From Sminthopsis crassicaudata (taxonomy: Eukaryota): a stretch of 64,000 bases of DNA. Under the pieces are notes generated by a model that saw nothing but the letters and a program-made list of their open reading frames with translations, was not told where the DNA came from and made no database searches. Location of the stretch: contig NC_133617.1 in assembly GCF_048593235.1 (NCBI RefSeq), positions 69,710,937-69,774,936 of the forward strand. Reading direction: 5' to 3'. Shown piece after piece: positions 8,181 through 58,905 of this stretch. The translations under genes were made by a program, and so were the position numbers. Numbering within the stretch: position 1 is the first letter of the stretch; each line of letters begins with the position of its first letter.

Positions 8181-9049
8181 GGAGAAAGGGGGAGAGAGAA
8201 ATTCTGACTTCAGAGAAATCAGGTATTGGGGTTTTGTGAGCTAAATCAAGGGGTGACTGAAAAGATGGGATTGAGAAGGGAAAGTATTAGAGGCTAGGAT
8301 AATAGGATTAATGTCTTTGAGGGACATTAGAGATGATTTCCTCCAATCCCTTCATTTTACAGATGAGAAAACTGAGTCTAGGCAATATAAAAGAATATAG
8401 CCGCTTGGGGAGAGGATATCTACATCTGTACAGGGAAAATTCATGCCACAGCCCAATAGTTTCCTGGCCCGAGAAGCCCCAGCTCTTCCTGGACCTGAAC
8501 ATTGGGTTGGGGGTGAGGAATGAGAGATTTAGTTTAGAGTCAGATCTTCTCTTTGGCTCCCAGACTAAGGAGCCCAGGGCCTCACAGTACTCTCATAGGG
8601 TCCTGGATGTTGAACTTGGACGGACATTATAGATCAGCCAGTCCAGTCCTCTCTCTACAGATGAGGAAACGAGCTCCAGCAGACTTGACCCAAATTATAG
8701 AGGGACTAAGAGGTAGAGTTAGGGACGGCCCAGGAAGGGAAAGAACAAAGATTCCAAACTAATGACCAGCTGGATCTCTCTCTGTATGTTATTATCAGAC
8801 ACTGAATTCAATAGAGCCGGGTCCCGGATGTCGGATCTCACCAATGCACTCCGGCCTTGAGGCTTCCTAAGTTTTGTTAACCCCTCGGAAAGCCCACAGC
8901 CACAAGCCGCACCCATTCAAAGCTGAGGCTCCCGTGGGTTCATCCTCATTGACATTGAGGTCTTTGACAGGACTGGGACAGCACCGCCCTCTACCGGCCC
9001 TTACTGTCCAGCACAGGACAGGGGTCAGAGGTTTTCGGGCCCCACGCTG

Positions 9050-9960
9050 ATCATGGGGTTGAACCAGAAAAGATTTTAGAGATCCTCTAACTTTGGTCCA
9101 GTCACTTTATCCCTACGAATAAGGAAATTAAGGCCGAATAAGGTCAAGAGGCTCATCAGCGGCCACGCAGTTGGTGACCAGCAGAGGGGGGATGAGAATC
9201 TCCCCCGACCCCAAATCTGACGCTCTTCAGCCCGGGGGATGGTTAGGGGCGTGGCTTTGCTTTTAACTGGCGTTATCTTGACCGTGCTCCCTACCCCCGT
9301 GTAACCTTGTGGAAAGTCACCAGGCTGGGCCCCAGCTTCCTCAGCTTCCTCATCCTCTCCCTGGAGGCTGGGACTGATTATCTCTACGGTCCCTTCCAGC
9401 TCTCCAGGCCACAATCCTACCCCAGGGCCACAGTCCGGGAATCCCGGGCTAACGGCCTTCCTAGGGATGCTCCGGAGCTTGGGCTGGGTCGCTCTGGATC
9501 ATTTATATTCGGCTTCGGGACAGAGAAGCCTCCGGGTGAGGGGGCCGGTACGGGTGTGGCGTGGAGCGTGGGGAGGGGCGCGGAGCCGGGGCGGCCCCCG
9601 GCCTCCGGCCTCTCCCCGGTCCCGGCTCGTGCGCAGCGCGCCGTCCCCACCCCGTATGGCTATAACGAGACGGCGCAGCCACGGCGGGTCCCCCGACGCG
9701 GGGAAGTCGGCGCAGGCGGTGTGATTGATGGTTTAATATCGCGAGCTGTGACCCAGCGCCCCCCCTCCCCACCCACGCCGCGGCAGGCGGCCCCCGAGCG
9801 CTGGCGAAAGCGCCGGGATTGAATAATTCAGTTACCAAAAAGGGAAAGAGGAAGCCGGGAAGAGAGACGCGCATGCCTTCAAGTGAACCGGGGGAGGGCT
9901 GCGTTGGGGAGACTGAGGTTGAGTCTGAGATGGAGAATCAAGGATTCGTGGGGTTCCTGA
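9050..9960. promoter_or_regulatory. CpG island
   Basis: Sharp rise in GC and CpG density (many cgcg, ccgg, gcgc) against a CpG-depleted AT-rich background. Confidence 0.9.
9722..9731 (+). promoter_or_regulatory. Pbx-Hox bipartite site
   Basis: TGATTGATGG matches TGATNNAT consensus, in an AT-rich patch (tgattgatggtttaatatc) inside the CpG island. Confidence 0.55.
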
Positions 9961-10689
9961 GGCTCAGAAAAACTCCACTCCTAAGTGACAGTCGGGATTT
10001 GAATCCAAGTCTTCTGACTGCAAGTCCAAGTCCCTTTCCATCACCTTACATTTCCAGGAAGGGCCGTACATTTTGGGGGGTGGGGCGCTGAGGGAGGGGG
10101 AAGGTAACCCGAAAGCTCAGGTTTCCAGATCCCCTCCCCCCACCCCACTCCTTTCAAGAGCAGACATTCCTGAAGCTGGGAACTGGCTCCCGTCCTTCTG
10201 CTTCCCAGTGGTTGTGAATGGAGGGGGCCAGATGCCTGAGTTTACCAACAGTGTTGGCAAGAGCCGTGATTTAGAGCAAGGATAGAGAAGGGGCTTTAAC
10301 TGCCTGGATACGCGCTTAACTTTGCCCTGGTTTCTTAGGGCTTGGCAAGGGGTTAGGGCTAACAGGGCAGATCAAGAACTGAGGGGACTGAGCCTCTGGC
10401 CCAACTGGAATAACAAGGACACTGAGCACAGAGGCAAGGATTGAAGGTCAAGGCCTTGGCAACCCCAGAAGAAGGCATAGAGATGGACAACCTGGAAGAG
10501 GGAGAGAACAGGAGAGAGAATAAAGGCTAAGCAGAGAGCAGATCATGAGAAGGTCATCATTATTTGGGCTAAAAAGGAAAACCCCCAGCAAATGGAGACT
10601 CAACCTTTTCACCCTTTTCATGAATAGTCATAAAATTAAAATTTGAAAGGAGTCTTAGACCTACTTAGTTCAACCCCTTTATTTTATGA

Positions 10690-19794: not shown

Positions 19795-20075
19795 TGTATG
19801 TGCTTGTGTGTCTGAATGTGTCTGTCTATCTCTTTGCCTCTGTGTATCTTTCCTAGTTATCTATTTATCTGTCTGCCAACCTATCTGTCTACCTGTGTCT
19901 CTGTCTCTGTATATGTTTGTCTCTCCCTCTCTTTCTCTTCTTTCCTCTTCCCTCTCTCCCTTTTCTTCTTCCCTCCCCTTCTGTCTTCTCTCCTCTCTTC
20001 TCCTTCCCTTCCCTTTCTTCTCTTCTCCTCTCCTCTCCTCCCTCACTTTTCTCCTCCCCTCTTCTCTCCCTTTTT
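19795..20075. repeat. Pyrimidine-rich low-complexity tract ((TCTG)n/(TC)n/(TTCTC)n)
   Basis: Direct inspection; source of spurious ORFs 19808-20217. Confidence 0.9.
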
Positions 20076-20077
20076 CC

Positions 20078-20800
20078 TGGTTAGACTCCATCTGGAGCAT
20101 TGTGCTTATTCTGGGCACCACCATTTTGAAAGGACACTGAAAAGCTGGAGAATGCCCAGAGCAGGGCAGCCAGACAGTGAAGGGCTCCGAGTCCATGTCA
20201 TAGGAGAATTAAGTTGAAGAAACCGAGGCTGTTTAGCCTGAAGAAGAGAAGACTCGGGGGGCACATGATAGCTGTCTTCAAGCATCTGAAGGGCCGTCAT
20301 CTGGAAAAAGGATTAGATTCATTCAGCCCAGTCTCAGAGAGAAGAACTGGGAACATGGGTAGAAAAGGTTTTGTGTCAGGGGAAACTTAACAATCAGAGC
20401 CTCCCTCCATCCTCCCACCCCCAACCCCTCTATGGAATGGGCTCAGAAAATGCTCCTCCCCCCCTTACTGGAAGCTACTCTTCCCTCCCCAGCATGGAAT
20501 GAGCTCACTCAGAAAATACGCCTCCCCCTCACTGATGGCTCCCCTCACTCCCCCTCCCCTCCATGAAATGGGCTCACTCAGAGAATACCCCTCCCCCTCA
20601 CTGGAGGCTCCCCTCACTCCCCCTCCCCACCATGAAATGGGCTTCCTCAGGAAATACCCCTCCCCCCTCACTGGAGGCTTCTGGTAGAGAATGAAGGACC
20701 ACCTGTCAAATGTACTGTGGGAGTTTCCTCTTTAGGATTGCCTTGGACAGACTGGCTGGCTGCTGCGTAAGACCCTTCCAACCCTGAAATTCTAATGAGG
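20078..20800 (+). mobile_element. CR1/L3 3' end
   Basis: ctggagcattgtgcttattctgggcaccaccattttgaaaggacactgaaaagctggag...tttagcctgaagaagagaagactcggggggcacatgatagctgtcttcaagcatctgaaggg; tail acccttccaaccctgaaattct. Confidence 0.85.
20432..20680. repeat. 69-bp minisatellite, about 3.7 units, inside the L3 tail
   Basis: Unit starts at 20432, 20494, 20563, 20632 (periods 62, 69, 69). Confidence 0.9.
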
Positions 20801-36500: not shown

Positions 36501-36813
36501 GAAAAAAAATTCTGTAGTTGGAATCAGAAGATGTTCATTCCTGGCTCTACAACTTATCAGGTATTAGTGTTGTAATGAAATTCCTGAGGAAGAGATTAAA
36601 AGGATACTTATTGGACAGTGTCAAAACATATCAATAAAATATTTTCACCAAAAATATTGAAAACTATCTTTACATGTAATTGGAAAAATAAAATATTGTT
36701 GGAAATTTGTTTTGAAAAGTAGATTTTACTATGTCAATGACCCACCTTCAACTCCCCCTAAAATGCCAGTGGCTCCATCTTACTTCCAGGATCAAATTCA
36801 AAGTCTTCTGTAT

Positions 36814-37584
36814 CCATCTCTCAGATTGGCTAGAATGACAGGAAAAGATAATGCTGAATGTTGGAGAGGATTTGGGAAAACTGGGACACTGATACATTGC
36901 TGGTGGAATTGTAAATACATCCAGCCATTCTGGAGAGCGATTTGGAACTATGCTCAAAAAGTTATCAAACTGTGCATACTCTTTGATCCAGCAGCGCTAC
37001 TACTGGGCTTATGTCCCAAAGAAATATTGAGGAGGGGAAAAGGACCTGTATGTGCCAAAATGTTTGTGGCAGCCCTCTTTGTAATGGCAAGAAACTGGAA
37101 ACTGAGTGGATGTCCATCAATTAGAGAATGGCTGAATAAGTTGTGGTATATGAATGTTATGGAATATTATTGTTCTGTGGGAAATGACCAGCAGGATGAA
37201 TCCAGAGAGGCCTGGAGAGACTTACATGAACTGATGCTGAGTGAAATGAGCAGGACCAGGAGATCGTTGTATACTTCAACAACAATACTATATGATGATC
37301 AATTCTGATGGACGTGGCCCTCTTCAACAATGAGATGAACTAAATCAGCTCCAATAGAGCAGTAATGAACTGCTACACCCAGCGAAAGAACTCTGGGAAA
37401 TGAGTGTGAACCATTATATAGCATTTCCAATCCCTCTGTTTTTATCTGCCTGCATTTCTGATTTCCTTCTCAGGTTAATTTTACATTATTTCAAAATCTG
37501 ATTCTTCTTGTACAGCAAAATAACTGTATGGATATGTATACATATATTGTATTTAACATATACTTTAAAATAAAAAAAAAACTT
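36814..37584 (+). mobile_element. Young 5'-truncated L1, ORF2 C-terminus uninterrupted, 13-bp TSD
   Basis: Open frame to 37308 contains the L1 Cys-rich domain (CWRGFGKTGTLIHCWWNCK...WLNKLWY); TSD aagtcttctgtat at 36801-36813 and 37585-37597; A tail. Confidence 0.95.
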
Positions 37585-38277: not shown

Positions 38278-39924
38278 ATTTTTCCTTTTGGCTGCTCCTA
38301 TGAATGCAAGTACTGGAGTTGGCAGCAACCTCAGAGGACCATCTGGTCAAATCTTCTTCTGCAGGGAAAGAAAGTCATCTATCCAGGGAGGCACAGAATT
38401 TGAACCCAAATCCTATCTCCAAGCCCAACCCTCTCACCACCCCAACATGCTGTCCCACTTGTCTTTATACTGCTGCTCCCAGATTTCTCCGAATACCCAG
38501 GAGAGTGAGTCACCAGAGAGAGGGGGAGGCTGTGGGGGCTGGTGACACCCACAGGACCAAGCACCCTGACCATAAAATCAAGGGCCTTCAAAGTCCTGCA
38601 GAGAGGCTACAGCATGTCACCTAAACTCCTCCCCCAAATCCTTCCTTTACACCATGGACTTGTGTATAGGGCCCTCAGGAGCTACTGAAGAATATAGGTG
38701 TGCAATACTCTAAAGAAGATGGAATTTAGAAAAAGATTCAAGAGGTACCTCCCAACAAAGGCAGAGAATTGTAAATGCAAAGAAGTCCCATTCCTTCCCC
38801 CTTCCTCCCCATTCCCTCCCCTGATCATGAATGGAAGAACTTGCCTTCCCCTTATTTAATCAGGAGGATAAAGTGATAAAATTATTTAAAATAAGGTTTC
38901 TTGTTCCTAAAAGCATTCTCTCCATCCACCCACCTACCCCTCCCCCATCCCTATATCGTCATCCCCAATATCAAATCCTCATATATCATCAGCTATCTAA
39001 AGCTTCTTTAGAATCAGGGCAACTGGTATGATTTCTACCCTCACCTTTTACCCCCATCCTTTTAAATAGAGGGGGGGGGAGAGAAACTAGGTAAAGCAGC
39101 CAGGTTTCTGGGGGCTTTGGCAGCTCTGTTACTAAGGCAACCAGACTTGCTAACCTGTAATTGGTGTAGGAAGCCAACCCAGGGCCTACAGCTCGAGAAG
39201 GCAGGGAGGGTGATGGAGGGATGGATCGCACCCCGATCAGCTTTCTCTCCTTCATCTTGAATCCATCCAAGCCCTCCCAGTGAGATCTTTGGTTCTCTCA
39301 TCCTTCTTTCAAAAGTGCACTGGCAGAGGCAATGGCCTTCATTAGCTTAAAGAGAAGTCTAGCTCCTTCTATTGGTCCTGGAGTAAGGGAGGGGTAAAGC
39401 AGGGGGCTTTACAGCAGAGCCCCCTCCTCCTAGCCTCAGCCCCAAGCCTGGGGTAGCTTTCTCTGGGACTGAATCCCATTCTGGGCAATATCTGTTTACA
39501 AACCAGTCAGCCAGCGGGGTAGAGGCCGCAGCAAATAGGACCAGCAAATACACTCATGGGAGCGCAGATTTAGAACTAGACAGACCAAAATGGTCATCAA
39601 TCCCACCCCCCTCATTCTACAGATAAGGAATTTACAAAGAGGTTAAATGATTTGCCCCATGTCACAAGGTAGTAAATTGTGCAGGGGAGTAGGGGATTTG
39701 AACCTAGGTTCTCTGCTGACAAATTCAGTCCCTTTTCCCTTCCCCTGTAGCATTCTGCCCAGGGATTAGAGAGAGTGGTTCAATTCTTCTTTAAGGAAAT
39801 TTATACATGAACCCAAGCCAACTATTCTGTACCTATAGTTAATCCAGTAACTCTGTTAAAAAGTTCACAACCTAGCATTTCTAGAAAGTCAGATTATCTA
39901 CCCCTGGGGCTAGGTTCTTAATGG

Positions 39925-40325
39925 GGGGAGAGATAGAGACAGAAATAAGAAATAGAGATAGAGAGACAGAGACAGAGATAGTGACAAAGAACAGATATAG
40001 AGAGACAAAACAGAGATAGACAGAGACAGATGGAGAGACAAAGAGACAGAGGTAGATAGAGACAAACAGAAACAGACAGACAGACAGACAGAGATGGATA
40101 GAAAGACAGACAGAAAAAGACAGAGACAAAGATAATGACAAAGAACAGAGAGACAGATAGACAAAACAGACAGAAAGGAAGAGATGGACAGAAACAGAAA
40201 GAGACAACCAAAAGGAAACAAAGATACAGTCAGAGAGACAGAAGCAGAGGTACAGAAAGAAACAAAGACAGAGAGAGACAGAGTCAGAAAGAGAAAGAGA
40301 GATAAAGACATAGAGACAGAGAGAC
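39925..40325. repeat. (GACA/GAGA)n complex purine-rich tract
   Basis: Direct inspection; source of spurious ORFs 39881-40470. Confidence 0.9.
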
Positions 40326-42140
40326 AGGAATCTCTTAAATCGGAACAACAGGCTTTGTGGAGAAAGAAATGGAGAGGGCTTGGCTCCTGGAAAGTGTGAT
40401 AGTGAAAGAGCAGGCATTTGTATTCAGACCCTGGTTGTGACCTCCTTTCTAGCACTAGCATCATGGCCAAGTCGCAGCAGATTCTCCTTCTCTGCTACAA
40501 GGGCCCATGTGACCTGCAAGGTCACTGTCTGAGTCAATGGCAGAGCCCAAGTTTAAGAAAGAGCAGTAGAGTTAGGATTTGGAGGATCTGGATTCAGATC
40601 AGATTCTGATTCTGATACTGACTAGCTTTGGGTTGAGTAGTTCACAGCACATTTTTATTTCCTAATCCTTAAATCAAGAGAGTTGAAGAAAATGGCTTCA
40701 AAGTCCCTCTCCAGCACTAACTAATGTTCCAACAATCTCTGTTCAGGAAGGAAGACAGGCTACTTACTCATTGGCCAGTCACTGCCTTGCCAGCCTCTCC
40801 CACTTGACAGATACCATACAGATGGGGCTGCCTTCAAGGACTTGGTGCAAATTGGCACCCCAGGAGGGTGAACACCAATCTACAGCTGCCGCCCCAGTGG
40901 GAGATATGCCAGACACTGCCCCCTACCAGCCTGGGCTATGTATGGGCAGCGGGGAGGCTGATCACATTCAGTCAGGAAGCAGTCCTGGGGTACTCCCAGC
41001 TACCTGTAGGAACCCTCTCGGCCACCCTCGAGAGGAGAAATAGCAGCTGTCTGAGGTGTTGGAGCCTTGGCCTCTCCCTATCCAAGCCGGACAGTTGGGC
41101 TTCCAGTGTCCCCCACTTAGCAAACCCCCTTATTTGGGAGAATGTAGAGGCAGGGAGGAGTCAGGCCTCCAAAGACTTTTCGCTGAACAGTCAGGCAGCT
41201 TCTATTCTCTGCTAGCAACATTGCTTGCCACCATTGCCAAAATTATCCTAGATTTATTGTGTATATAATTTTTCTCTCCCCTCCTCCTTCACCCCCCAAA
41301 TCGCTAGTGCGTTCTCACTTGCTGTAAACCCGCCTGCCCCTGGAAAACATCGGCAGAGCTGGCTGAGGCTGCTACCCGAGCATTAGCAAGCCGGGAGGGA
41401 AGGAGGAGCTAGAAGCAGAGATGAAAAAAGCAAAATGGAGAGCTAGGGAAAGGGATGTAGACATGGAAACACCTTGAGAAAGGATGGTCCAAAGACAAAC
41501 TTGGGGGGGATGGGAGGACAGCAGTCAGAGTAGAATCCTAAGTGCTCTGAAGGAGCTCCTGAAATATTATTTAAACCAGCCCCTTTATTTTACCGAAGGG
41601 ATATCACAATACTAATAATAGTAACAATAGCCTTTTATAGCACTTTTAAATTTGCAATTCTCTGCATGTTATCTCATAACAACCCTCCAAAGGTGATATT
41701 ATTATTCCCATTTTACAGATGAGGAGGCAGAGGTCAAAAAGATTTAGTGACTTGTCCATGATGACACAGAGCCAGGATCACAATCTAGGGCCTCTTATAC
41801 TTCAGTGGGTAGGGGTTAGTGGGGCAATTACCCTTTGAGGAAGACTCAGGCTCTCCCTTCTGCTCCCCCAGCAGCTACTGTGAGATCCCCCCTCTATTCC
41901 AGCCACAGCATTTCGTACATCCTGCTCCATTTCCATCATAAGTCAGAGCTGGGGATGGGTGGGAGGGATCCAAAACAAGCTGGCCTAGACCCTCAAGCCT
42001 TGGCTCTTGCTCTCCTCTCCCCATCTCCAAATATGGATAGAACCACATGGTTCAGTTTTAGAGTCAGTCTCAAGTGAGATGAGTTTTGTCTGGTCTCAGT
42101 CCAGCAGTTTCTAGACAGCAGCAGTCCCAGCCCTCTGATG

Positions 42141-45639: not shown

Positions 45640-46010
45640 TTCAGCGTGGAGATAGAGCCGAGCCGGCTGAGTCACTGCAGCAGAAACAGACGGGAGGGAG
45701 CGGTGAGCCATTAGCACCCTCTGCTCCAGAGTTAGGGTTCACCATCAATACCAAACAGCACCACCCATCCCCAAGAGGTGACAGATCCTGTATTTAAGGT
45801 GGAGAGGGGAGGAGGAAGAAAATCTATCACCAGAAACTATGGCGACACCTTTGTATTCCCCTCCCCTTCTTCGGGGAGCAAGAGAGGCAAATCAATGCCA
45901 TGTTAATGTAAGATTTCCAGCATCTCCGGGGGGAGCACTTCATAAAAGATGTATTGTTTCCATTGGCATTCATGCAGCTTCCCATCATTAGGCAAAATGG
46001 CGACAGCCCC
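45640..46010. promoter_or_regulatory. Candidate enhancer/promoter element
   Basis: AP-1 TGAGTCA 45668-45674; YY1-like ACTATGGCG 45836-45844 and CAAAATGGCG 45993-46002; AAATCAAT, GTTAATG, CATAAAA, CATTAG; CpGs retained. Confidence 0.55.
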
Positions 46011-46059
46011 AGAGGAGAGAAAAGATCCAGTGCCTGGGCCAGAAGGAAAGCAGCACCCC

Positions 46060-46450
46060 CCCCCTCCTGCTCCTGCTGGGGAAGGTGGGAAGAGAGGCAG
46101 GGATGAAGGAGGGAGAGAGGCAGGGAAACAGGAGAGAGGAGGAAAGAGAGCAGCTGTGATGGAGAGAGAGGAAGAGAAGGGGGAAGAAGAAGAAAGGAAA
46201 GGAGGAACGGAGGGGGGAAGGAGGAAGGGAGAAGGGGAAGTGAGAAGGAGGGGGATGGAGCAAGGAAGAAAGCATGAAAGTGAAAGAGGGAGATATATAG
46301 GAAATGGGGAGAGGCAGAGAAATAGGAAAGGAGAGGAGTGGTGAGGGAAAGAGGAGGAAGAGGAAGAAAGGGGAGGTGGAAGAGAGGAGGAAGGGAGAAG
46401 GAAAGAAATAAAAAAGGGGAGGATGGATACACATACACACACATACACAC
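46060..46450. repeat. Polypurine (GGA/GGGA/GAA) tract followed by (CA)-rich repeat
   Basis: Direct inspection; source of spurious ORFs 45827-46546. Confidence 0.9.
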
Positions 46451-48569
46451 ATATGGCAGGCATAAAGATATGGAGCTGAAAAGCAATGCAGGAAGACAGA
46501 AAACTAGCAGAGAGACAAGATAAAATGAGGGTTGAGCAAGAAACAAGTAAGAGATGGGGGAATGATGAAGATGAGGGGGAAGGGGGAAGTTCCCCTAACC
46601 TATAACCATGTCCCTTATGCCTTTCTCACTTCAATTCTTCTTTGGAATTTTCCTTGCTTCCCTTCATCCCTCCCTTCTGCTCTGTGTCTCTCCAGGCTTG
46701 CTCCTTTCCCTCCTCTTCTCTTCCTCGTGGAAATGGGCAGAGAAGGCCCCCTCCTGTCTGCCTGAGGATGGAGCCTGGCTTCACCCCATTACTCTGCCTC
46801 CCACACATGAGGGGTACCAGGCTGGGAGAGAACAGAGCTTGGCTAGGTTCTGCCTTCCACCGCATGCCATCCATCTTCTTCCTGGCATGGCAGGGCCAGT
46901 ATGCTGTAATTACTGCCTGGCTACTTTCAATCTGAAGGATACCCCCAGGAGCTGTACCTGCAACCACCTCTGGCTATAAAGGGCTGTATTATGTAACCTT
47001 CTTCCTTAATCCTTCTTGGGGTGGGAGAGTTCGTTCAATCTCCTTTAAGCTTTCCTTGATGATGGATCTTCCCTGGATAAGTCTTCTCCATCACTTAGCT
47101 AGGACTTTGCTCTTCTCTCATTAACTAGATACCACAGTTATTTGTCTATATAATGGGATTTAGAGATAGAAGGAGTGTTAGAGGTAATCGAGAGTTCAAC
47201 CTCTCCAGACAGATTAAATTACCAGCCCAAGGACACCTGGGTAGTAAGTGTCCGAGCCAGGATTTTGTGAATCTAAATCTACTATATCACATTGCTCCTT
47301 AAATGTATTTCCTCCTAATACATTTATAAAATCCTTAGGAGTGGGGTCAGTTGTCACCTCTATCTTTGTATCCCTGGTACCTGGCATAGTATTTTGTATG
47401 TAATATCTGGAGAAATTCACTGGTGAGAGTCCTCTTTCTGGGGAAATCAGTTAGAGAGACAGAGATGAAGCAGAGAAAGACAAGGAGAAGGAGAAGGAAG
47501 AAATGAGGCTAGGAAAGAATCAAAGAAATAGGAGAGAGACTTAATGAGTGTTTGTTGAAGGAATTAATGAGGTGGCTCTCTATTTCTAGTGTTGCAATAT
47601 TTAATCATGAAATACTTGGACTTCCTTCTCCCTTCTTGTTGGATGATTTGGGTGTCTGTCTTTCTTGGTTATTTCCTTTTCCCTGGGTTTAGGAGATTGG
47701 GACAAAAGATTTTGAGGTTTAAATTATAAAATTACTCTAAAGCTGGAAAGATCTTTAGCAGCTGTTTTACAGATAAGAAAACAAACTTTCCTAAGGCTCC
47801 ATAGACTGAGGCTGGATTTGAATTCAAAGCTTCAGATTCGAAAACCAGTTTTTTGACTTTCATTGTTACCTCTTCAGTTGACCACATGCAACCTCCATCT
47901 CAGAGCTTGTCCCAAAGGGCTATCCTTTTTTAAAAAAGAAAGAGGAATTCAATTTGATCTTTCTAGACAGCCTGCAGCCCACTGGCAGAGCAGGTGGTGA
48001 CCTTTGAATTCTGCTCTTAGCTATGGAACAGAGTCAGGATCAAGTGGGTGACTAAAAGAAGCACTGGGTGTTATAGTGTAGCCCAAAGAGCCCTGGATTT
48101 GAAAGTCCCAACTGAAATTTGACTGAAATCCATGACATTGGGTGAGTCTATATGGTCTTTCTGGGCCCAGATTTCTTGACCTGTAAAATGAGAGAGCTAA
48201 GCTAAATGATGTCTGAGAGTCCTTTCCAGCTCTAAATGTTGTGTTCCTCTCCAGTGTTGGACCCCTGACCCAGAGGCCTGAGCCCCAGTAACCTGGATAC
48301 TCTTCCCAAACATAGAGATTCTCCTCTTCTTTTTTTTTCCTTTTAGCCCATTCCTAGACAATCCTATGACAAGTCTCCTGTAGAAAAAGGAAGGGGAGAT
48401 CCAGAAGAGAGTTTCAAGTCCCCCATCTCTCAACCCCCCTCTCTTGGCCTTCTTGCTCCACCACAGGGGAGTTTCCAAACGACTGAAAATAGCTTTAAAT
48501 TAGGAAAAAGAGCTAAACTGCCAGGGTCCTTTGGTCTATTAAAAGCTGAGCAGAGGCCACTCAGCTCCC

Positions 48570-51215: not shown

Positions 51216-52563
51216 AGAGGTAGAACTAATGAATAAAATCTGAAGACTAACCTTTCCCATAAGAGTGATAAGGGAATGGGCTTTTGTTATGAATCTATCA
51301 TCCTCCTAGAGTTATTTAAGGAGTGTCAGATTCAATTCTAACCTGATACCCTCTTGGAGACTAAGGGGAAAATTTCTTTGCCCAAGTGGTCCAGGGCATT
51401 TCCTACCTCTCCACCCTCTCCTCTTCCTTTTTTTTTCTTTTCTTGTTTTAATAGTATTTTATTTTTCCCCAAATCCATGTTAAAGCAATTTTTTTCATTT
51501 TTGAATTGGAAATTTTATCCTTCCCTCCCTTTCCTTCCCATTCCCTTGCCCCCTTAGACCATATAGCTTATATAAAGATTACTGCCCTTCTCCTACTCTG
51601 AAAAGATGAGTCAACTCTCAGATCATATCTATTTATGCTATCATCAAACCATGTCTACCTACATATTTAAACAATCCACACACAGATGCATCTAATAGAA
51701 ATAAGACTGTAAAAGGAAAGTTGGACTGTGATGGAGCTACAATATTTGCCTATAGAGCTTCTGTGAATAAATGTTCATTAAAGCAATGGGGAACCACTGA
51801 AGATCTTTGAATTGAGAAGTAACATGGTCCCATCTGCACCTTAGGAAGATTACTCAAACAGTGGGTACTTGGGCACCCAAAAGGCAATGGAGAAGTGTAG
51901 AATACCATATGCTTACATACAATGAGTGATATGAGGTAGCTGTATCAAACTCTATGCCCTCCAGGGGAGGGAAGTCCAAACTAGATTAAAATGTAATTGG
52001 GAAATGCTTAACAAAATAAAAATAAAATTTTTTGTTTTCCATGTCAATATCCATGAGCAGGGATCTGTTCACATTTAGTCCCATCAACATAAGGGATATA
52101 TCCCTAAGGAAATATGAATATGGGAATACAGAATAACAGATGGACAGCATGAGTTTTACTCTGGTACCTTCAAAATGTTAAAAGGCCCAGAAGGCGGCCT
52201 CCATTACAGTGGGCCAATCCTCAGTAGGAAGAGGACCTAAAAGTGAATATAATTGGAAACAGGATGAGAAGGCAACAGTGGACTACAATCTTTATCATTG
52301 GGGGAAAACTCTGAAATTACAGATCCTGTGAATCAAAATATTCTGTCTTGAATTCTTGAATCCTCTACTCCTTTTGGCCTGGTCCTGTCTCTGTCCCCTG
52401 AACATTCCTTCCTTCCTATTTCTACCTCTATCTCCATTTATAACTGATCAAATATCCCTCTTTTAATGTCCACACTAAGTTCCATTTCTTCCAGGAAGCC
52501 TTGTCTGACCACAGCAGCCCCAAGTGAACATTACTTCCTCTGATAAGATATAATAATATTTGC

Positions 52564-52762
52564 TGTCTATACCACTAATTGGTCATTGAACTAATTATTT
52601 TTATTTACTAACCATACTACTAATTGGGCATCAAACTAATTATTCTTAATTTATTGTCTATACCACTAATTAGGCATTGAACTAATTATTTTTATTTATT
52701 GTCTCTGCCACTAATTGGGTGTTCCGCTAATTATTTTAAAATTTTGCTCTCTGTGCCACTAT
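52564..52762. repeat. 45-46 bp minisatellite, about 4.3 units, in an L2-like tail
   Basis: CTAATT anchors at 52575, 52620, 52666, 52711; unit about tgtctataccactaattgggcattgaactaattatttttatttat. Confidence 0.9.
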
Positions 52763-53599
52763 TTGAGCAGTAAACTAAAAAAAAATAAATTGACATGTGA
52801 GGGTCTTCTCTCTCCAACTAGATATAAGCTCCTTGAAGGTAGAACCGTCTTCTATTTTTATGGATCCCCTGCACCATCTATCTCAGAACTGTCATAGAAT
52901 ATAGATCCATGTAATATTTGGTGGATGATTTTATGACATTTTATGCCCTGGATCCCAAGTTAAAGCTTCAAAATCTTCATCTACATCTCTAACATCAACA
53001 ATGGGAGATCTGGTAGCAAGGTGGAGGAGGGGGGACTGCCATCTGTGTCAATTCTATTTTCATCTCCCCGTGTGCCTGTGAGACTTGTACTTCCTGTTGT
53101 GCCTCAGGTGAGAAGAGAACCTACCTTCTTCTGACCACATGTCTTCCATCTCCTGCTGTATGTATCCCCTGAGGGAAAGGAACAAAGGGTGACTTCCATC
53201 TGCACCAGGGCACAGCAATTTCCATCTTCTGCTTTGATTACCTGATCTCCTCCAGATGAAGAAGATCGACCTTCACTTCTGGTGGGCTAATCTTCCATCT
53301 TCAGGTGTACCTGTGCCCTGAAAAAAGAGGAAGCAGAAAGTTGGTGGGGTATCCAGCTCCTGCTGAGGGAGGTTCATTTTCCATCTCCTGTCACACTGCC
53401 TCCTGCTGCACCATCTTCTGTCTAATTTCCAGACTTCAGATAGAAGAGAAGTGAAATAGGAACTTCTATCTGACCGAACACCTTCCATCTGGGGCTTTGA
53501 ATTTCTTTTAACTGATCTCTAGCCTCTTTTGGGGAAAAGAGTAGCACCTTCCACTCCATGAATAAAATATTCTTCCTCTCAACATAATTCATAAAACAA

Positions 53600-54223
53600 T
53601 GTGTATTAAAAATAAATAAAAAATACTCTTCCTTCCTACACATCTCTGATTCTCATCTAAATCCCTGTAGGTTATCAAGGTCATCATCACTATTCCCTGA
53701 CACCTGATAACTTATTTCCAACCCTTTTAACCATTTTAATCCAAAATCCCAACCAAATGTAACCTATTCCTCTCATTGTACTCTCTGGAATACCTGCTCC
53801 ATAGGCAATAAACTTGTTTTCATTAAAAAATTTTTTTTCTCTTCCATTCTTTCCATTTTCTAGAAATTACTGGCACCTGACTCCTCACTGATGACAAAGC
53901 TTCCACAGCTACCCTTTCTAGTACTGTTTGGACTTTCACTCATTCCTCTAGGCTCACTGGTTGAGGTGGAAGGGAGTTGAAATACTCCTTTCTCCCTCTT
54001 GCCACATCTAGGTTCTCTCCTTACCTCCATCACTCAGGTAACCTTTTTTCCTTTGAGGCCCAATCAAAATTCTCTTGCTATTATTTGTAGGTCATTCTTC
54101 TTCCTCTTTCATTGAGTTCTGTACCTAATTCATCATTTTTCTCTCCTCCCCATGCCAGGAGACTTTGACATACATATTCTCTCTCAAACACTCTAACCAC
54201 TCAGTTCCTCAACCTACTCAACT

Positions 54224-54257
<34 letters not shown>

Positions 54258-57235
54258 CTTCCAAGAGAACTTTGTGAGATAGAGACCAACTCATATCACC
54301 CTTTGGGGCTTCATCTAGTGACCTCAGGGTTTGAAGTCTGTTCTTTGTCTCTATTAAAAGCTATCTATGGTCAGAGTTGTTTTTGCTTTTTGTTTATTCT
54401 TAAAGGTTGAGGTCTGCTTTTAGGGCAAAAGGGAGATTGTCCCAAGGTTCCTCTACAGGCAGCAGCAGCTTCATGCTGCCCTGAGACCAATGCTACGGAC
54501 TTCCTTCCTATACTGGGTGGGTGTGACCAAGTCACACCTTATTCTGGGGTTCACTGTTTGCCTTTTCAAGTTGTGTTGGATGTCTCATAGGTAGTCTGCT
54601 GTTCCACTAGCTTCTGAACCAGGACAGAGTAGCCAACACAGCTGTATTTTGGCTAAGAGCCTAATGGTAGATTCCCCCAGTGCACAGAATGCCACACCAC
54701 TCTGGGTCCCTGCACTTGTTCCTCACCTCATCCACCTCCCCCAGTGCTCAATTAAAACAAACCTTTTCTGAAGTTCTTCAAAAATATCTTCTGTGGAAAT
54801 TTGTTACACTCCAAATATTTATGTGTTCTGTCACTCCAAAACCAGTTCAGAAGCTTGATCTGGTGTTGATCTGAGGGAAGTCAAGAAGAGCTCAAGACCT
54901 GTCTACTCTCTACCATTTTGGCTCTGCCCCCTCTCAGCTCCTACAAGTTACTCTTTTACTCCACATCAGCTATAAACAATAATGGTGTACCCTGACTTTT
55001 TACCATTATTCACAAAGGTACCACTTCCAATTGAAGAATTCTGAAAACCTCTTCTCTGGCTATGGCTTTTCATCTCTCCTTTCCTTACTAAACCCTATTT
55101 TTCATTCATCTTGTGACCTCTAGTCTCTCAACCCCTCACTTCACTTCCAGACCCTACACTAGATACTCTGTCTTCTTTTCCCCATCTTGAACCTTTATCA
55201 ACCAGTTGAGTCCCTTGCCTCCTTATCATCTTATCAACTGCCAAGCCTCAGTCTTGAATAATCTCACTATCAGCCACTTTTACTTTTATATACCTAACAA
55301 AGGTGGAGAAAATCATGCAATATTCTGACTGGATCCACTACAATCTATGTTATACAACCTCAATTGGACCCTTACTGCTGCTAAGCAATCCTACTATCTA
55401 AGTCACTATCCCACTCTCCAGAGTGGCTCTTCCAAATCTTTACATCCCTCCTCAAATCTCCAATGCTTTCCATTCTTTGCTGAAATCCTTGACTCATATT
55501 TTACCAAAAAAAAAATTGAGATCATTCCATTAAGATCCTTATTTTCCTCTCCTCTTCATCTCTATGACTCAAATGCCTTCTGCCATTATCTGTTCTTTTG
55601 CCTCTGTCTCACACAAAGTGGCCCTACTTCTTAGCAAGGCAAAGCCTTCTACCTACACAAGCAATCCCATTCCATCACACCTTCTCTAACAAATTACTCC
55701 CCTCTCTCATCCCCACTGTTACTTATTTTCTACCTTTCCCTGTTTATTAGCTCCTTCTCTACTACTTTCTGACATGCCATGTAGCTCCCACCCTCAAAAA
55801 ATTCTCACCTGGTCCTTCCCTGATAGCTATCATCTCATCTTTTCTATCCTTGGTCACTACACCCTTTGAGAAGGCTATCTGCAATAAGTGACTCCACTTT
55901 CTCTTCTTTAATTTGTTTCTTAACCCCTTACAATCTTGATTTCTGACTCATCATTCCATTAACACTGTTCTCTCTGAAGTTACCAATGATTTCCTAATTG
56001 TCAAATGCAGTGCCTTTTCTCAATCCTCATTTTCCTAGATATCTTTATACCATTGAGTGCTCTCTTCCCCTTGATGCTCTCTTCTCTCTAGGTTTTTGGG
56101 ACACCACTTTCTCTTCATTGGTACTCTTCTTAACTATCTTCACCCAGGGTTATACTCTCTAGCTGTAGGTGTCCCACAAGGTTCTAATCTAGCCCTCTTC
56201 TCTTCTTCCTCTATGCTACTTCACTTGATGAACTCATCAGTTCCCATGGATTTAAATATCTTTTTGTTGATTCTCAAATCTCTCTAACCTGCCCTAATCT
56301 TTCTGCTGATCTCCAGTCATGCATCTACAACTGCCTTTCAGACATACTTAAATAGATTCCAGTAGACATTCAAAACTCAATATATCCAAAATGAACCTAT
56401 TCTTTTTCTCCTAAACCTTCCTCCCTTCTAAACTCCCCTATTACTGTAGAGGGCAACACCATCCTTCCAGTCCCCCAGATTCATAATCTAGGTGCCATCG
56501 TCAGCTCCTCACTATCTTTCACCTTTCATGTTCATTCTGTTGCCATGGGCTGATTTCATCTTTCCAACAGCTCTCAAATACAACCCCTCTCTCCTCTGAT
56601 ACTATCATTAACCAAGAGCAGGCCCTCATAACCTCACAATTGGACTAACTGCAATAGCTTACTAGCGGATCTACCTATCATGTCTTTCTCCACTCCAATC
56701 TATCCTCCATTGAACTGCCAAAGTGATTTTCCTAAAGTATAGGTCTGACCATGTCAACCCCCTATTCAACAAACTCCACTGGCTCTATATCACCTTCAAG
56801 GTAAAACATAAAATCTTCTGTTTGATGTGAAAACCTTTTTATAATCCAGCTTCTTCTACACATACACACCCTACTTTTCACCATGTAGTCTTTGATTCAT
56901 CACTTAGCTTCAGGCATTTTCTCGGACTTTCTCCCATGCCTGTAATGCTCTCTTTTCTCACATCTCCTGGCTTCCCTGATCTTCAAGTCTTAATTAAAAC
57001 TCCACATTCTAAAATGCATTTAACATCCCCTCTTAATTTAGGTATCTTCTCTTTGTTAACTGTTTCCTATTTATTCTACCTATAGCTTGTTTATACATAT
57101 TTTCTTTAGGTATTGACTAGATCTTAAGTTCTCTGAGGGCAGAAACTGTCTTTTACATCTTTTTGTATTTTCATTGTTTAGCACAGGGCCTGCCACATAC
57201 CAGGTACTTAAGATACTTATTGACTGACTGAGCTA
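53600..57235 (+). mobile_element. Near full-length L2 ORF2 (endonuclease to 3' end), degenerate
   Basis: HCTLWNTCSIGNKL at 53774 (APE-type WNARS motif), GVPQGS RT motif near 56170, terminus gcacagggcctgccacataccaggtacttaagatacttattgactgactga. Confidence 0.9.
54227..54932 (-). mobile_element. 5'-end-only L1 (5' UTR plus ORF1 start) with poly(A) tail
   Basis: Minus strand begins gggggcagagccaaaatggtagagagtag (L1 5' terminus, YY1-type motif); ends with ORF1-like DEAPKGDMSWSLSHKVLLEELK running into 28 A; flanked by ctca(a/g)ctcct. Confidence 0.8.
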
Positions 57236-57558
57236 CTAATCTTAACTGATCCAATTGAGTCTAGTACAATCAGATCTATCATGAAACAGGAGGAGGAATT
57301 ATATTCACAAGAGATACAGAGCACTGTTACACAGTATATGGGGGACTAGTCTAGTCCCACAACATAATTTGTCTCTCTCTGTGTGTCTCTGTCTCTGTCT
57401 CTCTCCTTCTCTTGTCTTTGTTTCTTTCCCTCTCTATCTCATACATGCAACATATAACACATAATTGACACAGTTTTGTGTGACTCTCAATTCAATTCAG
57501 CAGTTACGTAATTTTGTACAAGTTACTTTAAATGAAGAATCCAATAATTGGGGATGAA

Positions 57559-57562
<4 letters not shown>

Positions 57563-57644
<82 letters not shown>
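57563..57644. repeat. (CT)n microsatellite, about 40 units, one interruption
   Basis: Direct inspection. Confidence 0.95.
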
Positions 57645-58905
57645 TTTTGACAAGAACTGCTGGAAAAATTGAAAATAGTATGTGAAAAAAAAAAGGGAAA
57701 AAAAGATTTCAGTCAGTATCTTATGTCATATACCATAATAAATTCCAAAATTGTTACTCAACTTGAAATGGTCATTTTTTAAAATTTAGAGTAAAATAGA
57801 TACTGACATTTTTCACAATTCTGACAAAAGATATATTTTAAAATGTGTTATATTATTAATGGGGTTTGTTTTTATATCAAGTTTTTTCTGAATATAATCT
57901 ATTCCTACTCCCCTACCCCTCAAGTCATCCCTTCAATCAAAAATTTTTTTTAAAAAAGGGGAGAGGGGGGAAACTAAACAAAATATCTAAGATGTCTGAT
58001 AGTATATGCAATATTCTCCATGTTTTGTCCTATACCTCTGCAATAAAGGGAGAGAAAGATGTTTTCTTAGCTATTCTCCAGGGGAAACGTTTGGTCATTA
58101 TAATTATTGTTTTATCATTTACATTTTTGTTGAAATCATTGTATATATTATTTTTATGGTTCTTATTTCCCTCTGAATCACTTCATATAACTCTTCCCAA
58201 ACTTCTTTGAATTCTTCTTATTCATTTCTTATGGTATAATAATATTCTATTAGAGGGGGAAAATGTTTACCTAAACAGAGGATGGAGGAGAATACAAAAG
58301 ACAAAATGGTTACGTCCAATTAGATGAAATTGAAAAGCTTTTATAAGAATAGAAACTGCCAACTGGGAATTAAGTTTCTCTGATAAAGGTCTGATAATCC
58401 AAGATATATAGGGTAATCAACAACACAAGAGTCATTCTTCAGTGAAGTGGTTATAGGAAATTTGCACAGAAAATTGCAAGAATCAAATGAAAGATCTTTC
58501 CAAAACACACTTAGCAAATGGACAAGTGTCACAATTTAGAAACTGTCAAAATTGGAAGGGATATAGGAAGACACATACTAAAACTCTTTTGGTGGCACTG
58601 TGAATCAGTATAACTGTTCCAAAAAGCAATTTAAAACTTTGCTTTTTTAAAAAGTAAGATTAAAATGTCAATGCCTTTTAGCCAAGAAGATCTCATTACT
58701 ATATATGTACTATACACAATACAACATATACATGCAGATATACCCCAAGGAGGTCAAAGACAGGAAGATCTTAAATACACCAAAATATTATAACAACACT
58801 TTTTGTGAAAGAAAAGAAGTATAAACAAACTGTTCATTTATGGAAAAGCTAAACAAATTGTGATACATGAATATGATGGAATATTTCTGTAGTAGAAATT
58901 ATGAA
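57645..58905 (+). mobile_element. Old L1 ORF2 3' region containing an inverted L1 3' UTR piece (~57870-58250)
   Basis: gacaagaactgctggaaaaattg, tctgataaaggtctgataatccaagatatatag, aaacaaattgtgatacatgaatatgatggaatatt. Confidence 0.7.

What the first reader, a model, noticed from the sequence alone, without database searches (positions are those of the whole stretch)
54217..54942. Head-only L1 retrocopy: intact 5' end, ORF1 start, poly(A), probable TSD
Seen: on the minus strand the insert starts at the L1 5' terminus (GGGGGCAGAGCCAAAATGG) and runs ~680 bp through the 5' UTR into the ORF1 N-terminus (...KGDMSWSLSHKVLLEELK). It stops at ATTAAA fused to 28 A, is flanked by ctcaactcct (54217-54226) / ctcagctcct (54933-54942), and the host L2 continues on both sides. 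Known: TPRT normally yields the opposite, 3' ends with 5' truncation, and L1 transcripts can be prematurely polyadenylated. Inference: a short prematurely polyadenylated (or internally primed) L1 RNA was mobilised in trans. If many copies share this 3' breakpoint, it is a non-autonomous, Pol II promoter-carrying SINE-like L1 derivative, smaller than HAL1, that spreads promoters. This is my best candidate for an undescribed system here.
Basis: partly seen in the sequence, partly recalled or inferred. Interest (0 to 1): 0.75.

Follow-up and report, generated by a model that had tools for sequence, protein, structure and literature searches.

The report
Old 3'-truncated L1 head insertion

Summary
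On the minus strand, 54932-54254 carries an L1-type 5' terminus, about 530 nt of 5' UTR and about 50 broken ORF1 codons. It ends at GAAGAATT plus a pure 28-A run and is flanked by a 10-bp direct repeat.

Contigs from four species show three things:
- The insert belongs to a family of thousands of copies.
- The 5' junction is present in three other species whose flanks differ by 6-8%, so the insertion is old and fixed.
- In those species the 5' repeat reads ctcaActcct, identical to the 3' copy, so the original duplication was a perfect 10/10.

It is therefore a genuine L1-machinery insertion of a 3'-truncated L1.

The only poly(A) hexamer, ATTAAA, abuts the tail; the next lies 102 nt upstream. 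This fits textbook premature polyadenylation poorly. It fits better a start of reverse transcription on the ORF1 A-run (ELKK). A later deletion between that A-run and the tail cannot be excluded.

The exciting part, a multi-copy promoter-carrying head-only family, could not be tested. The read tool masked the A-run, and every route to other copies failed. Earlier notes of this scan describe other 3'-truncated L1s in this genome with different breakpoints, which favours sporadic events. Interest is low.

The parts
54933..54942 (-). 5' copy of the target-site duplication (+ strand ctcagctcct)
   Evidence: In three other species 54937 is A, which gives ctcaactcct, identical to the 3' copy (table 3). 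Chance estimate.
54402..54932 (-). L1 5' UTR starting at the L1-type 5' terminus (AG + GGGGCAGAGCC...). The lower border, where ORF1 starts, is approximate.
   Evidence: Summed contig depth is 10^3-10^5 here against 20-500 in the flanks, in four species (table 2). Contigs of three relatives bridge the 5' junction (table 8, records 16, 24, 32).
54912..54921 (-). Degenerate YY1-type box near the 5' terminus (CAAAATGGT; ACCATTTTG on the + strand)
   Evidence: The tool-reported agreement of family contigs here is GCCATCTT in three relatives and ACCATCTT in the dunnart run (table 7). The YY1 core is GCCAT, and single deviations abolish binding in mouse L1 (PMC11602158).
54254..54401 (-). Remnant of the first ~50 codons of ORF1, broken by frameshifts and stops, ending ...LLEELKK
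   Evidence: Three-frame translation. About 17 nt are missing at ~54316-54321 relative to most family contigs (table 7). No Pfam or Atlas support for these short pieces.
54251..54256 (-). ATTAAA hexamer, overlapping the start of the A-run
   Evidence: Hexamer scan: it lies 3 nt from the tail start, and the next candidates are 102 nt (AATAGA) and 145 nt (AATAAA) upstream.
54226..54253 (-). Uninterrupted 28-A tail. The first ~6-7 A could be template-encoded (the ELKK codons).
54217..54226 (-). 3' copy of the target-site duplication (+ strand ctcaactcct). The implied first-strand nick on the + strand is TCCT/ACAA (54223-54226 / 54943-54946).
   Evidence: The nick site is read directly from the sequence. 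It is pyrimidine/purine but only a loose fit to TTTT/AA.

Best explanation
This is a single, ancient insertion made by the L1 reverse-transcription machinery (target-primed reverse transcription) of a 3'-truncated L1 template. The inserted cDNA covers the L1 5' terminus, the 5' UTR and the first ~50 ORF1 codons.

Most likely route: reverse transcription did not run from the normal 3' end. It started, or re-aligned, on the internal A-run of ORF1 (GAA TTA AAA AA..., ELKK). The A-run was lengthened by ORF2p slippage, by later microsatellite growth, or both. With only ~680 nt left to copy, the enzyme reached the RNA 5' end, which explains the 'intact head'.

The copy carries no complete gene, was fixed before four dasyurid species diverged, and has since decayed.

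Shown: the anatomy, the ancestrally perfect target-site duplication, the multi-copy L1-type parent family, and presence in four species. Inferred: the priming site and the slippage.
For: - Anatomy: 5' terminus, A28 tail and 10-bp repeat.
- The repeat is 10/10 in three relatives (table 3) and unlikely by chance.
- The insert matches 8,500-10,000 contigs per genome in four species, while the flanks are near single-copy (tables 1-2).
- Contigs of three relatives cross the 5' junction with 6-8% flank divergence (table 8).
- The break lies exactly on an A-rich codon run, and no poly(A) hexamer has the usual 10-35 nt spacing.
- Internal priming on A-rich stretches is a described L1 route (PMC4859970; PMC5322556).
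- ORF2p slippage expands A-segments during insertion (PMC3415434).
- Earlier unchecked notes of this scan report other 3'-truncated, TSD-flanked L1s in this genome with different breakpoints. That fits sporadic events rather than one family.
Against: - Classical internally primed inserts are 'tailless' or carry only the short internal A-run. 28 pure A needs an extra step (slippage or later expansion).
- The parent L1 sequence beyond the breakpoint was never seen, so the length of the internal A-run is inferred from the codons ELKK, not observed.
- The nick site TCCT/ACAA offers only one terminal T to pair with A.
- The 3' junction in the relatives lay inside the masked stretch 54214-54264, so it is not shown that they carry the same short form.
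Confidence: 0.4

Rival explanations
1. A short L1 RNA was made by premature or non-canonical cleavage and polyadenylation just after ATTAAA. It was then reverse-transcribed in trans by ORF2p from another L1, like a processed pseudogene.
For: - A long pure A-tail is what a polyadenylated RNA gives.
- An ATTAAA hexamer is present at the end.
- 3' truncation by premature polyadenylation is a described L1/SVA category (PMC4859970).
Against: - The tail starts on the hexamer itself, instead of 10-30 nt downstream.
- No other hexamer variant lies within 100 nt upstream.
- Trans-mobilisation of an RNA without ORF2 runs against L1 cis-preference (established knowledge), so it is expected to be rare.
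Confidence: 0.25
2. A longer, possibly full-length, L1 inserted here normally. Later, a DNA deletion between the internal ORF1 A-run and the terminal poly(A) removed everything in between and left the duplications intact.
For: The product would look identical. PMC5322556 states that internal priming is hard to tell from recombination between internal and terminal oligo(A) stretches that leaves the TSDs behind. Nothing shows the 3' junction of the relatives.
Against: - It needs a ~6-kb deletion with both ends in short A-runs.
- All four species have the 5' junction, and the left-flank contigs of two relatives run only ~62-65 nt past 54209 (table 8, records 17 and 25). This is compatible with the same short form, though not proof.
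- No relic of L1 3' sequence lies next to the tail.
Confidence: 0.15
3. The copy belongs to a self-propagating, ORF-less 'head-only' L1 derivative: 5' UTR promoter, a few ORF1 codons, ATTAAA and an encoded A-run. It was mobilised in trans many times. This is the SINE-like family the reader proposed.
For: - A head-only DNA copy has ATTAAA followed by an encoded A-run, so its own transcripts could again end in A. This is inference only.
- The 5'-terminal ~180 nt show several-fold higher summed depth than the ORF1 start (table 2).
- HAL1 and ORF1-absent bipartite non-autonomous LINEs show that such derivatives can arise.
Against: - No second copy in 64 kb.
- No look-alike in the scan's notes (a blank there means little).
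- Published SINE and non-autonomous LINE inventories of the Tasmanian devil list no such family (PMC3403934).
- The uneven depth is equally explained by 5' UTR modules shared or lost between L1 subfamilies. Many contigs skip 131-159 nt at 54636/54662-54794 (table 5).
- Other 3'-truncated L1s noted in this genome have other breakpoints.
Confidence: 0.12

Closest known systems
Internally primed / 3'-truncated L1 insertions (Srikanta et al. 2009 as cited in PMC4859970; tailless retropseudogenes, PMC5322556)
   Same: Insertion by target-primed reverse transcription with a target-site duplication. The 3' end lies at an internal A-rich stretch of the template, and the normal L1 3' part is lacking.
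   Different: This copy carries a long pure 28-A tail, whereas described internally primed copies are tailless or short-tailed. It is extremely short (0.68 kb) and reaches the L1 5' terminus.
3' truncation by premature polyadenylation of L1/SVA RNA (Perepelitsa-Belancio & Deininger 2003 as cited in PMC4859970)
   Same: An L1 lacking its 3' sequence but ending in poly(A), with a hexamer (ATTAAA) at the end.
   Different: The hexamer-to-tail spacing is 0-3 nt instead of 10-30 nt.
HAL1 (half-L1) non-autonomous elements (Bao & Jurka 2010 as cited in PMC5322556 and PMC5786205)
   Same: An L1 5' part plus poly(A) and target-site duplication, without ORF2, dependent on ORF2p from elsewhere.
   Different: HAL1 encodes a complete ORF1 and forms families of thousands of copies. 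Here only ~50 broken ORF1 codons are present and no family was shown.
ORF1-absent bipartite non-autonomous LINEs (PMC5786205)
   Same: A LINE head retained without coding capacity.
   Different: Those keep a LINE 3' part and are multi-copy families made by internal deletion. Here the only 3' part is the A-run, and copy number is unknown.

Membership tests
L1-mediated (TPRT) insertion | Target-site duplication directly flanking the insert | tested here: met
   10 bp, 9/10 in the window and 10/10 in three relatives (table 3). Chance is 0.03-0.25%.
L1-mediated (TPRT) insertion | 3' poly(A) tail | tested here: met
   28 uninterrupted A at 54253-54226.
L1-mediated (TPRT) insertion | Insertion at an L1 endonuclease-type site (TTTT/AA-like) | tested here: inconclusive
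   The implied nick is TCCT/ACAA on the + strand. It is pyrimidine/purine but a loose match.
L1 sequence (5' UTR + ORF1) | Homology to L1 5' UTR and ORF1 | tested here: inconclusive
   Thousands of matching contigs in four species. The G-run plus YY1-type box at the terminus and the ORF1-like N-terminus are recognised from knowledge only. Pfam and Atlas gave nothing for the short pieces, and no L1 reference was available.
HAL1 | Complete ORF1 retained | tested here: not met
   Only ~148 nt of ORF1, in three frames with stops.
HAL1 | Multi-copy lineage with shared 3' end | not testable with these tools
   The breakpoint was masked, and no other copies were retrievable.
SINE | Head derived from a small RNA with a Pol III promoter | tested here: not met
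   No Rfam match at E<=1 in 52000-58000. The head is an L1 5' UTR.
   No second copy in the window. All external routes were blank.
Premature-polyadenylation product | Poly(A) signal 10-30 nt upstream of the tail | tested here: not met
   ATTAAA abuts the tail, and the next hexamers are 102 and 145 nt upstream.
Internally primed ('tailless') retrocopy | 3' end at an internal A-rich stretch of the template | tested here: met
   The break lies at GAAGAATTAAAAA..., the ELKK codons. The length of the parent A-run was not observed.
Internally primed ('tailless') retrocopy | No long terminal poly(A) | tested here: not met
   28 A are present. This needs ORF2p slippage (PMC3415434) or later expansion.

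The most novel reading that the evidence does not exclude
The copy is one of many products of an ORF-less, Pol II-promoter-bearing L1 'head' element of dasyurid marsupials. Such an element would re-create its own A-ended RNA from ATTAAA plus an encoded A-run and be mobilised in trans. It would be a non-autonomous L1 derivative smaller than HAL1 that scatters L1 promoters.
Probability: 0.1. Interest if true: 0.6.

Novelty: new member of a known kind. Interest (0 to 1): 0.2.

Why it matters
As it stands, this is a clean, phylogenetically dated example of a rare but described class: a 3'-truncated L1 that reaches the 5' terminus. It could serve as a shared-insertion marker among dasyurids and as one data point on how L1 reverse transcription can start at internal A-runs.

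It would matter more only if a genome-wide census showed many copies with the same 3' breakpoint. That would define a new promoter-carrying, protein-less L1 parasite. It would also bear on how L1 cis-preference is bypassed.

Tried and rejected
- Other copies in the window: blastn of the insert found only A/T-run hits.
- A proxy for the empty site: the joined flanks, with the local region masked, had no hit against the rest of the window.
- Breakpoint census with reads: read laying masked 54214-54264 and dropped the rows there.
- Other copies through predicted proteins: there were no candidates for the antisense ORF across the breakpoint or for the 67-aa 5' UTR ORF.
- Collection scans with 22-24-nt family motifs: viral contigs gave 0 and metagenome contigs gave 0. 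A second metagenome scan gave one hit, L001. It is a 25-nt chance match and was discarded.
- Rfam on 52000-58000: nothing.
- Pfam on ten flank pieces, two insert pieces and the L1 ORF2 tail at 36712-37305: nothing.
- ESM Atlas on the 35-aa ORF1 piece: no usable hit.
- Internal repeats or monomers in the 5' UTR: none of note.
- Srikanta 2009 and Bao & Jurka 2010 are not held in the library and are cited only through papers that cite them.

Full report
**What is there.** Read on the minus strand, the region has five parts in order:
- a 10-nt word, aggagctgag (54942-54933);
- AG followed by GGGGCAGAGCCAAAATGG from 54932;
- about 680 nt of body ending in ...CTCTTGGAAGAATTAAA;
- an uninterrupted A-run (54253-54226; TRF reports 28 units);
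- the word aggagttgag (54226-54217).

The last 200 nt translate in one frame to ...LDEAPKGDMSWSLSHKVLLEELKK. Further upstream the ORF1-like reading (…KNKQKAKTTLTIDSF…) sits in other frames and is cut by stops. The 28 A include the three A of the ATTAAA hexamer. The ORF1 remnant (about 148 nt) is badly broken.

**Is the direct repeat real?** A match of 9/10 or better at both borders, allowing +-3 nt of slack, occurs at about 0.25% of random placements in this window, and 10/10 at 0.03%. More tellingly, contigs of three other coded species carry A instead of G at 54937 (table 3). That turns the 5' word into ctcaactcct, identical to the 3' word. The duplication was therefore perfect when made, and the mismatch is a later change in this lineage. 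Two of the relatives share a further change at 54940.

**Is it a repeat family, and how old is the copy?** Contigs of one run of the window's own species and of three other species were laid on 53800-55360 at 80% likeness. This gave 8,500-10,000 matching contigs per run. Summed depth was 10^3-10^5 inside 54265-54965 and 20-500 in the flanks (tables 1-2). The insert is thus one member of a family with thousands of head-bearing copies in all four genomes.

In each of the three relatives a contig runs from the right flank across 54933 into the first 38-103 nt of the element (records 16, 24, 32). Flank divergence from the window is 6-8%. The insertion therefore predates the split of these species and is fixed.

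An earlier follow-up note of this scan names the genome as the fat-tailed dunnart (s1-153345; not checked here). The relatives would then be other dasyurids.

Compared with most family contigs, this copy lacks about 17 nt near 54316-54321 and 5 nt at 54894. Many family contigs skip 131-159 nt at 54636/54662-54794 (tables 5 and 7), so 5' UTR length varies among subfamilies. The published devil L1-1_SH model has a 1,158-nt 5' UTR (PMC4408412). This copy, with about 530 nt, comes from a different and presumably older subfamily.

**L1 identity.** This rests on three things: the copy number; the G-run plus YY1-type box at the terminus; and the ORF1-like N-terminus. The last two are recognised from general knowledge of L1. 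Pfam and the Atlas gave nothing for such short broken pieces, and no L1 reference library was available.

YY1 binds a conserved site at the 5' end of human L1 and positions initiation. Its core is GCCAT, and single deviations abolish binding in mouse L1 (PMC11602158). The agreement sequence that the tool reports for family contigs at this place is GCCATCTT in the three relatives. This copy reads ACCATTTT. The box exists in the family but is degenerate here.

**Host context.** The insert interrupts a segment with strong negative GC skew on both sides. An RT-like motif (GVPQGS) lies at 56075-56284 on the + strand. Pfam did not recognise any flank piece, and no other copy in the window aligns across the joined flanks. 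'Host L2 on both sides' is therefore plausible but not shown.

**How it arose.** The target-site duplication, the tail and the exact 5' terminus make this an L1-machinery (target-primed reverse transcription) product of a template that ended, or was entered, at GAAGAATTAAAAA…. Four routes give this product.

1. *Premature polyadenylation and trans mobilisation.* This is a described class (PMC4859970). The geometry is wrong, however: the only hexamer abuts the tail, and the next candidates lie 102 and 145 nt upstream.
2. *Reverse transcription starting or re-aligning on the internal A-run.* Internal priming is also a described class (PMC4859970; PMC5322556). It explains why the break sits on an A-rich codon run. 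The 28-A length then needs ORF2p slippage, which is documented to expand A-segments during insertion (PMC3415434), or later microsatellite growth.
3. *A normal longer insertion followed by deletion between the internal A-run and the tail.* PMC5322556 notes explicitly that this leaves the duplications in place and is hard to tell from internal priming.

I rank them: route 2 about 0.4, route 1 about 0.25, route 3 about 0.15, route 4 about 0.12.

**The family question.** This is the only part that could make the finding novel, and it could not be answered.
- The read tool masked 54214-54264, the breakpoint itself, and dropped the rows there.
- The window has no second copy.
- Two protein word searches with ORFs of the head found no candidates.
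- Scans of viral and metagenome contigs with family motifs found nothing, or a 25-nt chance match.
- Published inventories of dasyurid SINEs and non-autonomous LINEs list no L1-head family (PMC3403934). RepeatMasker-style annotation would simply call such copies L1 fragments, so this is weak evidence.
- Earlier unchecked first-reader notes on other pieces of this genome describe a 2.1-kb 5'UTR+ORF1+spacer copy with duplications (s1-153719) and a 3.96-kb L1 with intact 5' end, no tail and a 17-bp duplication (s1-170975). If correct, 3' truncation happens at many different positions in this lineage. That favours sporadic events over one successful head-only lineage.

**Comparison with known kinds.**
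- It works like an internally primed or prematurely ended L1 retrocopy.
- It is not HAL1, because the ORF1 test failed.
- It is not a SINE, because it has no small-RNA head.
- It resembles the ORF1-absent non-autonomous LINEs discussed in PMC5786205 only in lacking genes.

**Verdict.** It is a real, old, shared 3'-truncated L1 insertion, and a new member of a known kind. The proposed new system is unsupported but not excluded (about 0.1).

Noticed in passing
window 54636-54794 (family level, table 5): In all four species many family contigs skip 131-159 nt here (for example 54662->54794 in 9-18 contigs per run). The 5' UTR of this L1 lineage therefore exists in long and short forms, and this copy has the long form.
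   Followed up: partly
window 54912-54921 versus family contigs (table 7): The tool's agreement sequence for the 5'-terminal box is GCCATCTT (a perfect YY1 core) in the three relatives' runs but ACCATCTT in the dunnart run. This may be a lineage difference in the L1 promoter box.
   Followed up: no
window 36712-37308 (+): A 198-aa open stretch with the Cys/His-rich C-terminal look of L1 ORF2 (…CWRGFGKTGTLIHCWWNC…), judged by eye to be a 5'-truncated L1 3' part. Pfam gave no hit.
   Followed up: partly
window ~9000-10100: A G+C-rich block with long overlapping ORFs on both strands. It looks like a CpG island or promoter region.
   Followed up: no
window 19800-20220, 39880-40470, 45830-46550: CT/TC-rich low-complexity tracts that give long spurious Ser/Leu/Cys/Phe-rich ORFs on both strands.
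   Followed up: no
window 52557-52737 and 57562-57644: A 45-bp minisatellite of 4 copies and a (TC)41 microsatellite. The first was already noted by the scan (s1-153484).
   Followed up: no
window 53906-54064, 54171-54223, 55284-55360: Flank segments with 5-20 times the single-copy contig depth in all four species (table 2). This is consistent with an old interspersed repeat hosting the insert.
   Followed up: no
L001:4478-4502: The metagenome contig Ga0164310_10015995 shares only a 25-nt exact word with the L1 head. It is a chance match, not a copy.
   Followed up: yes
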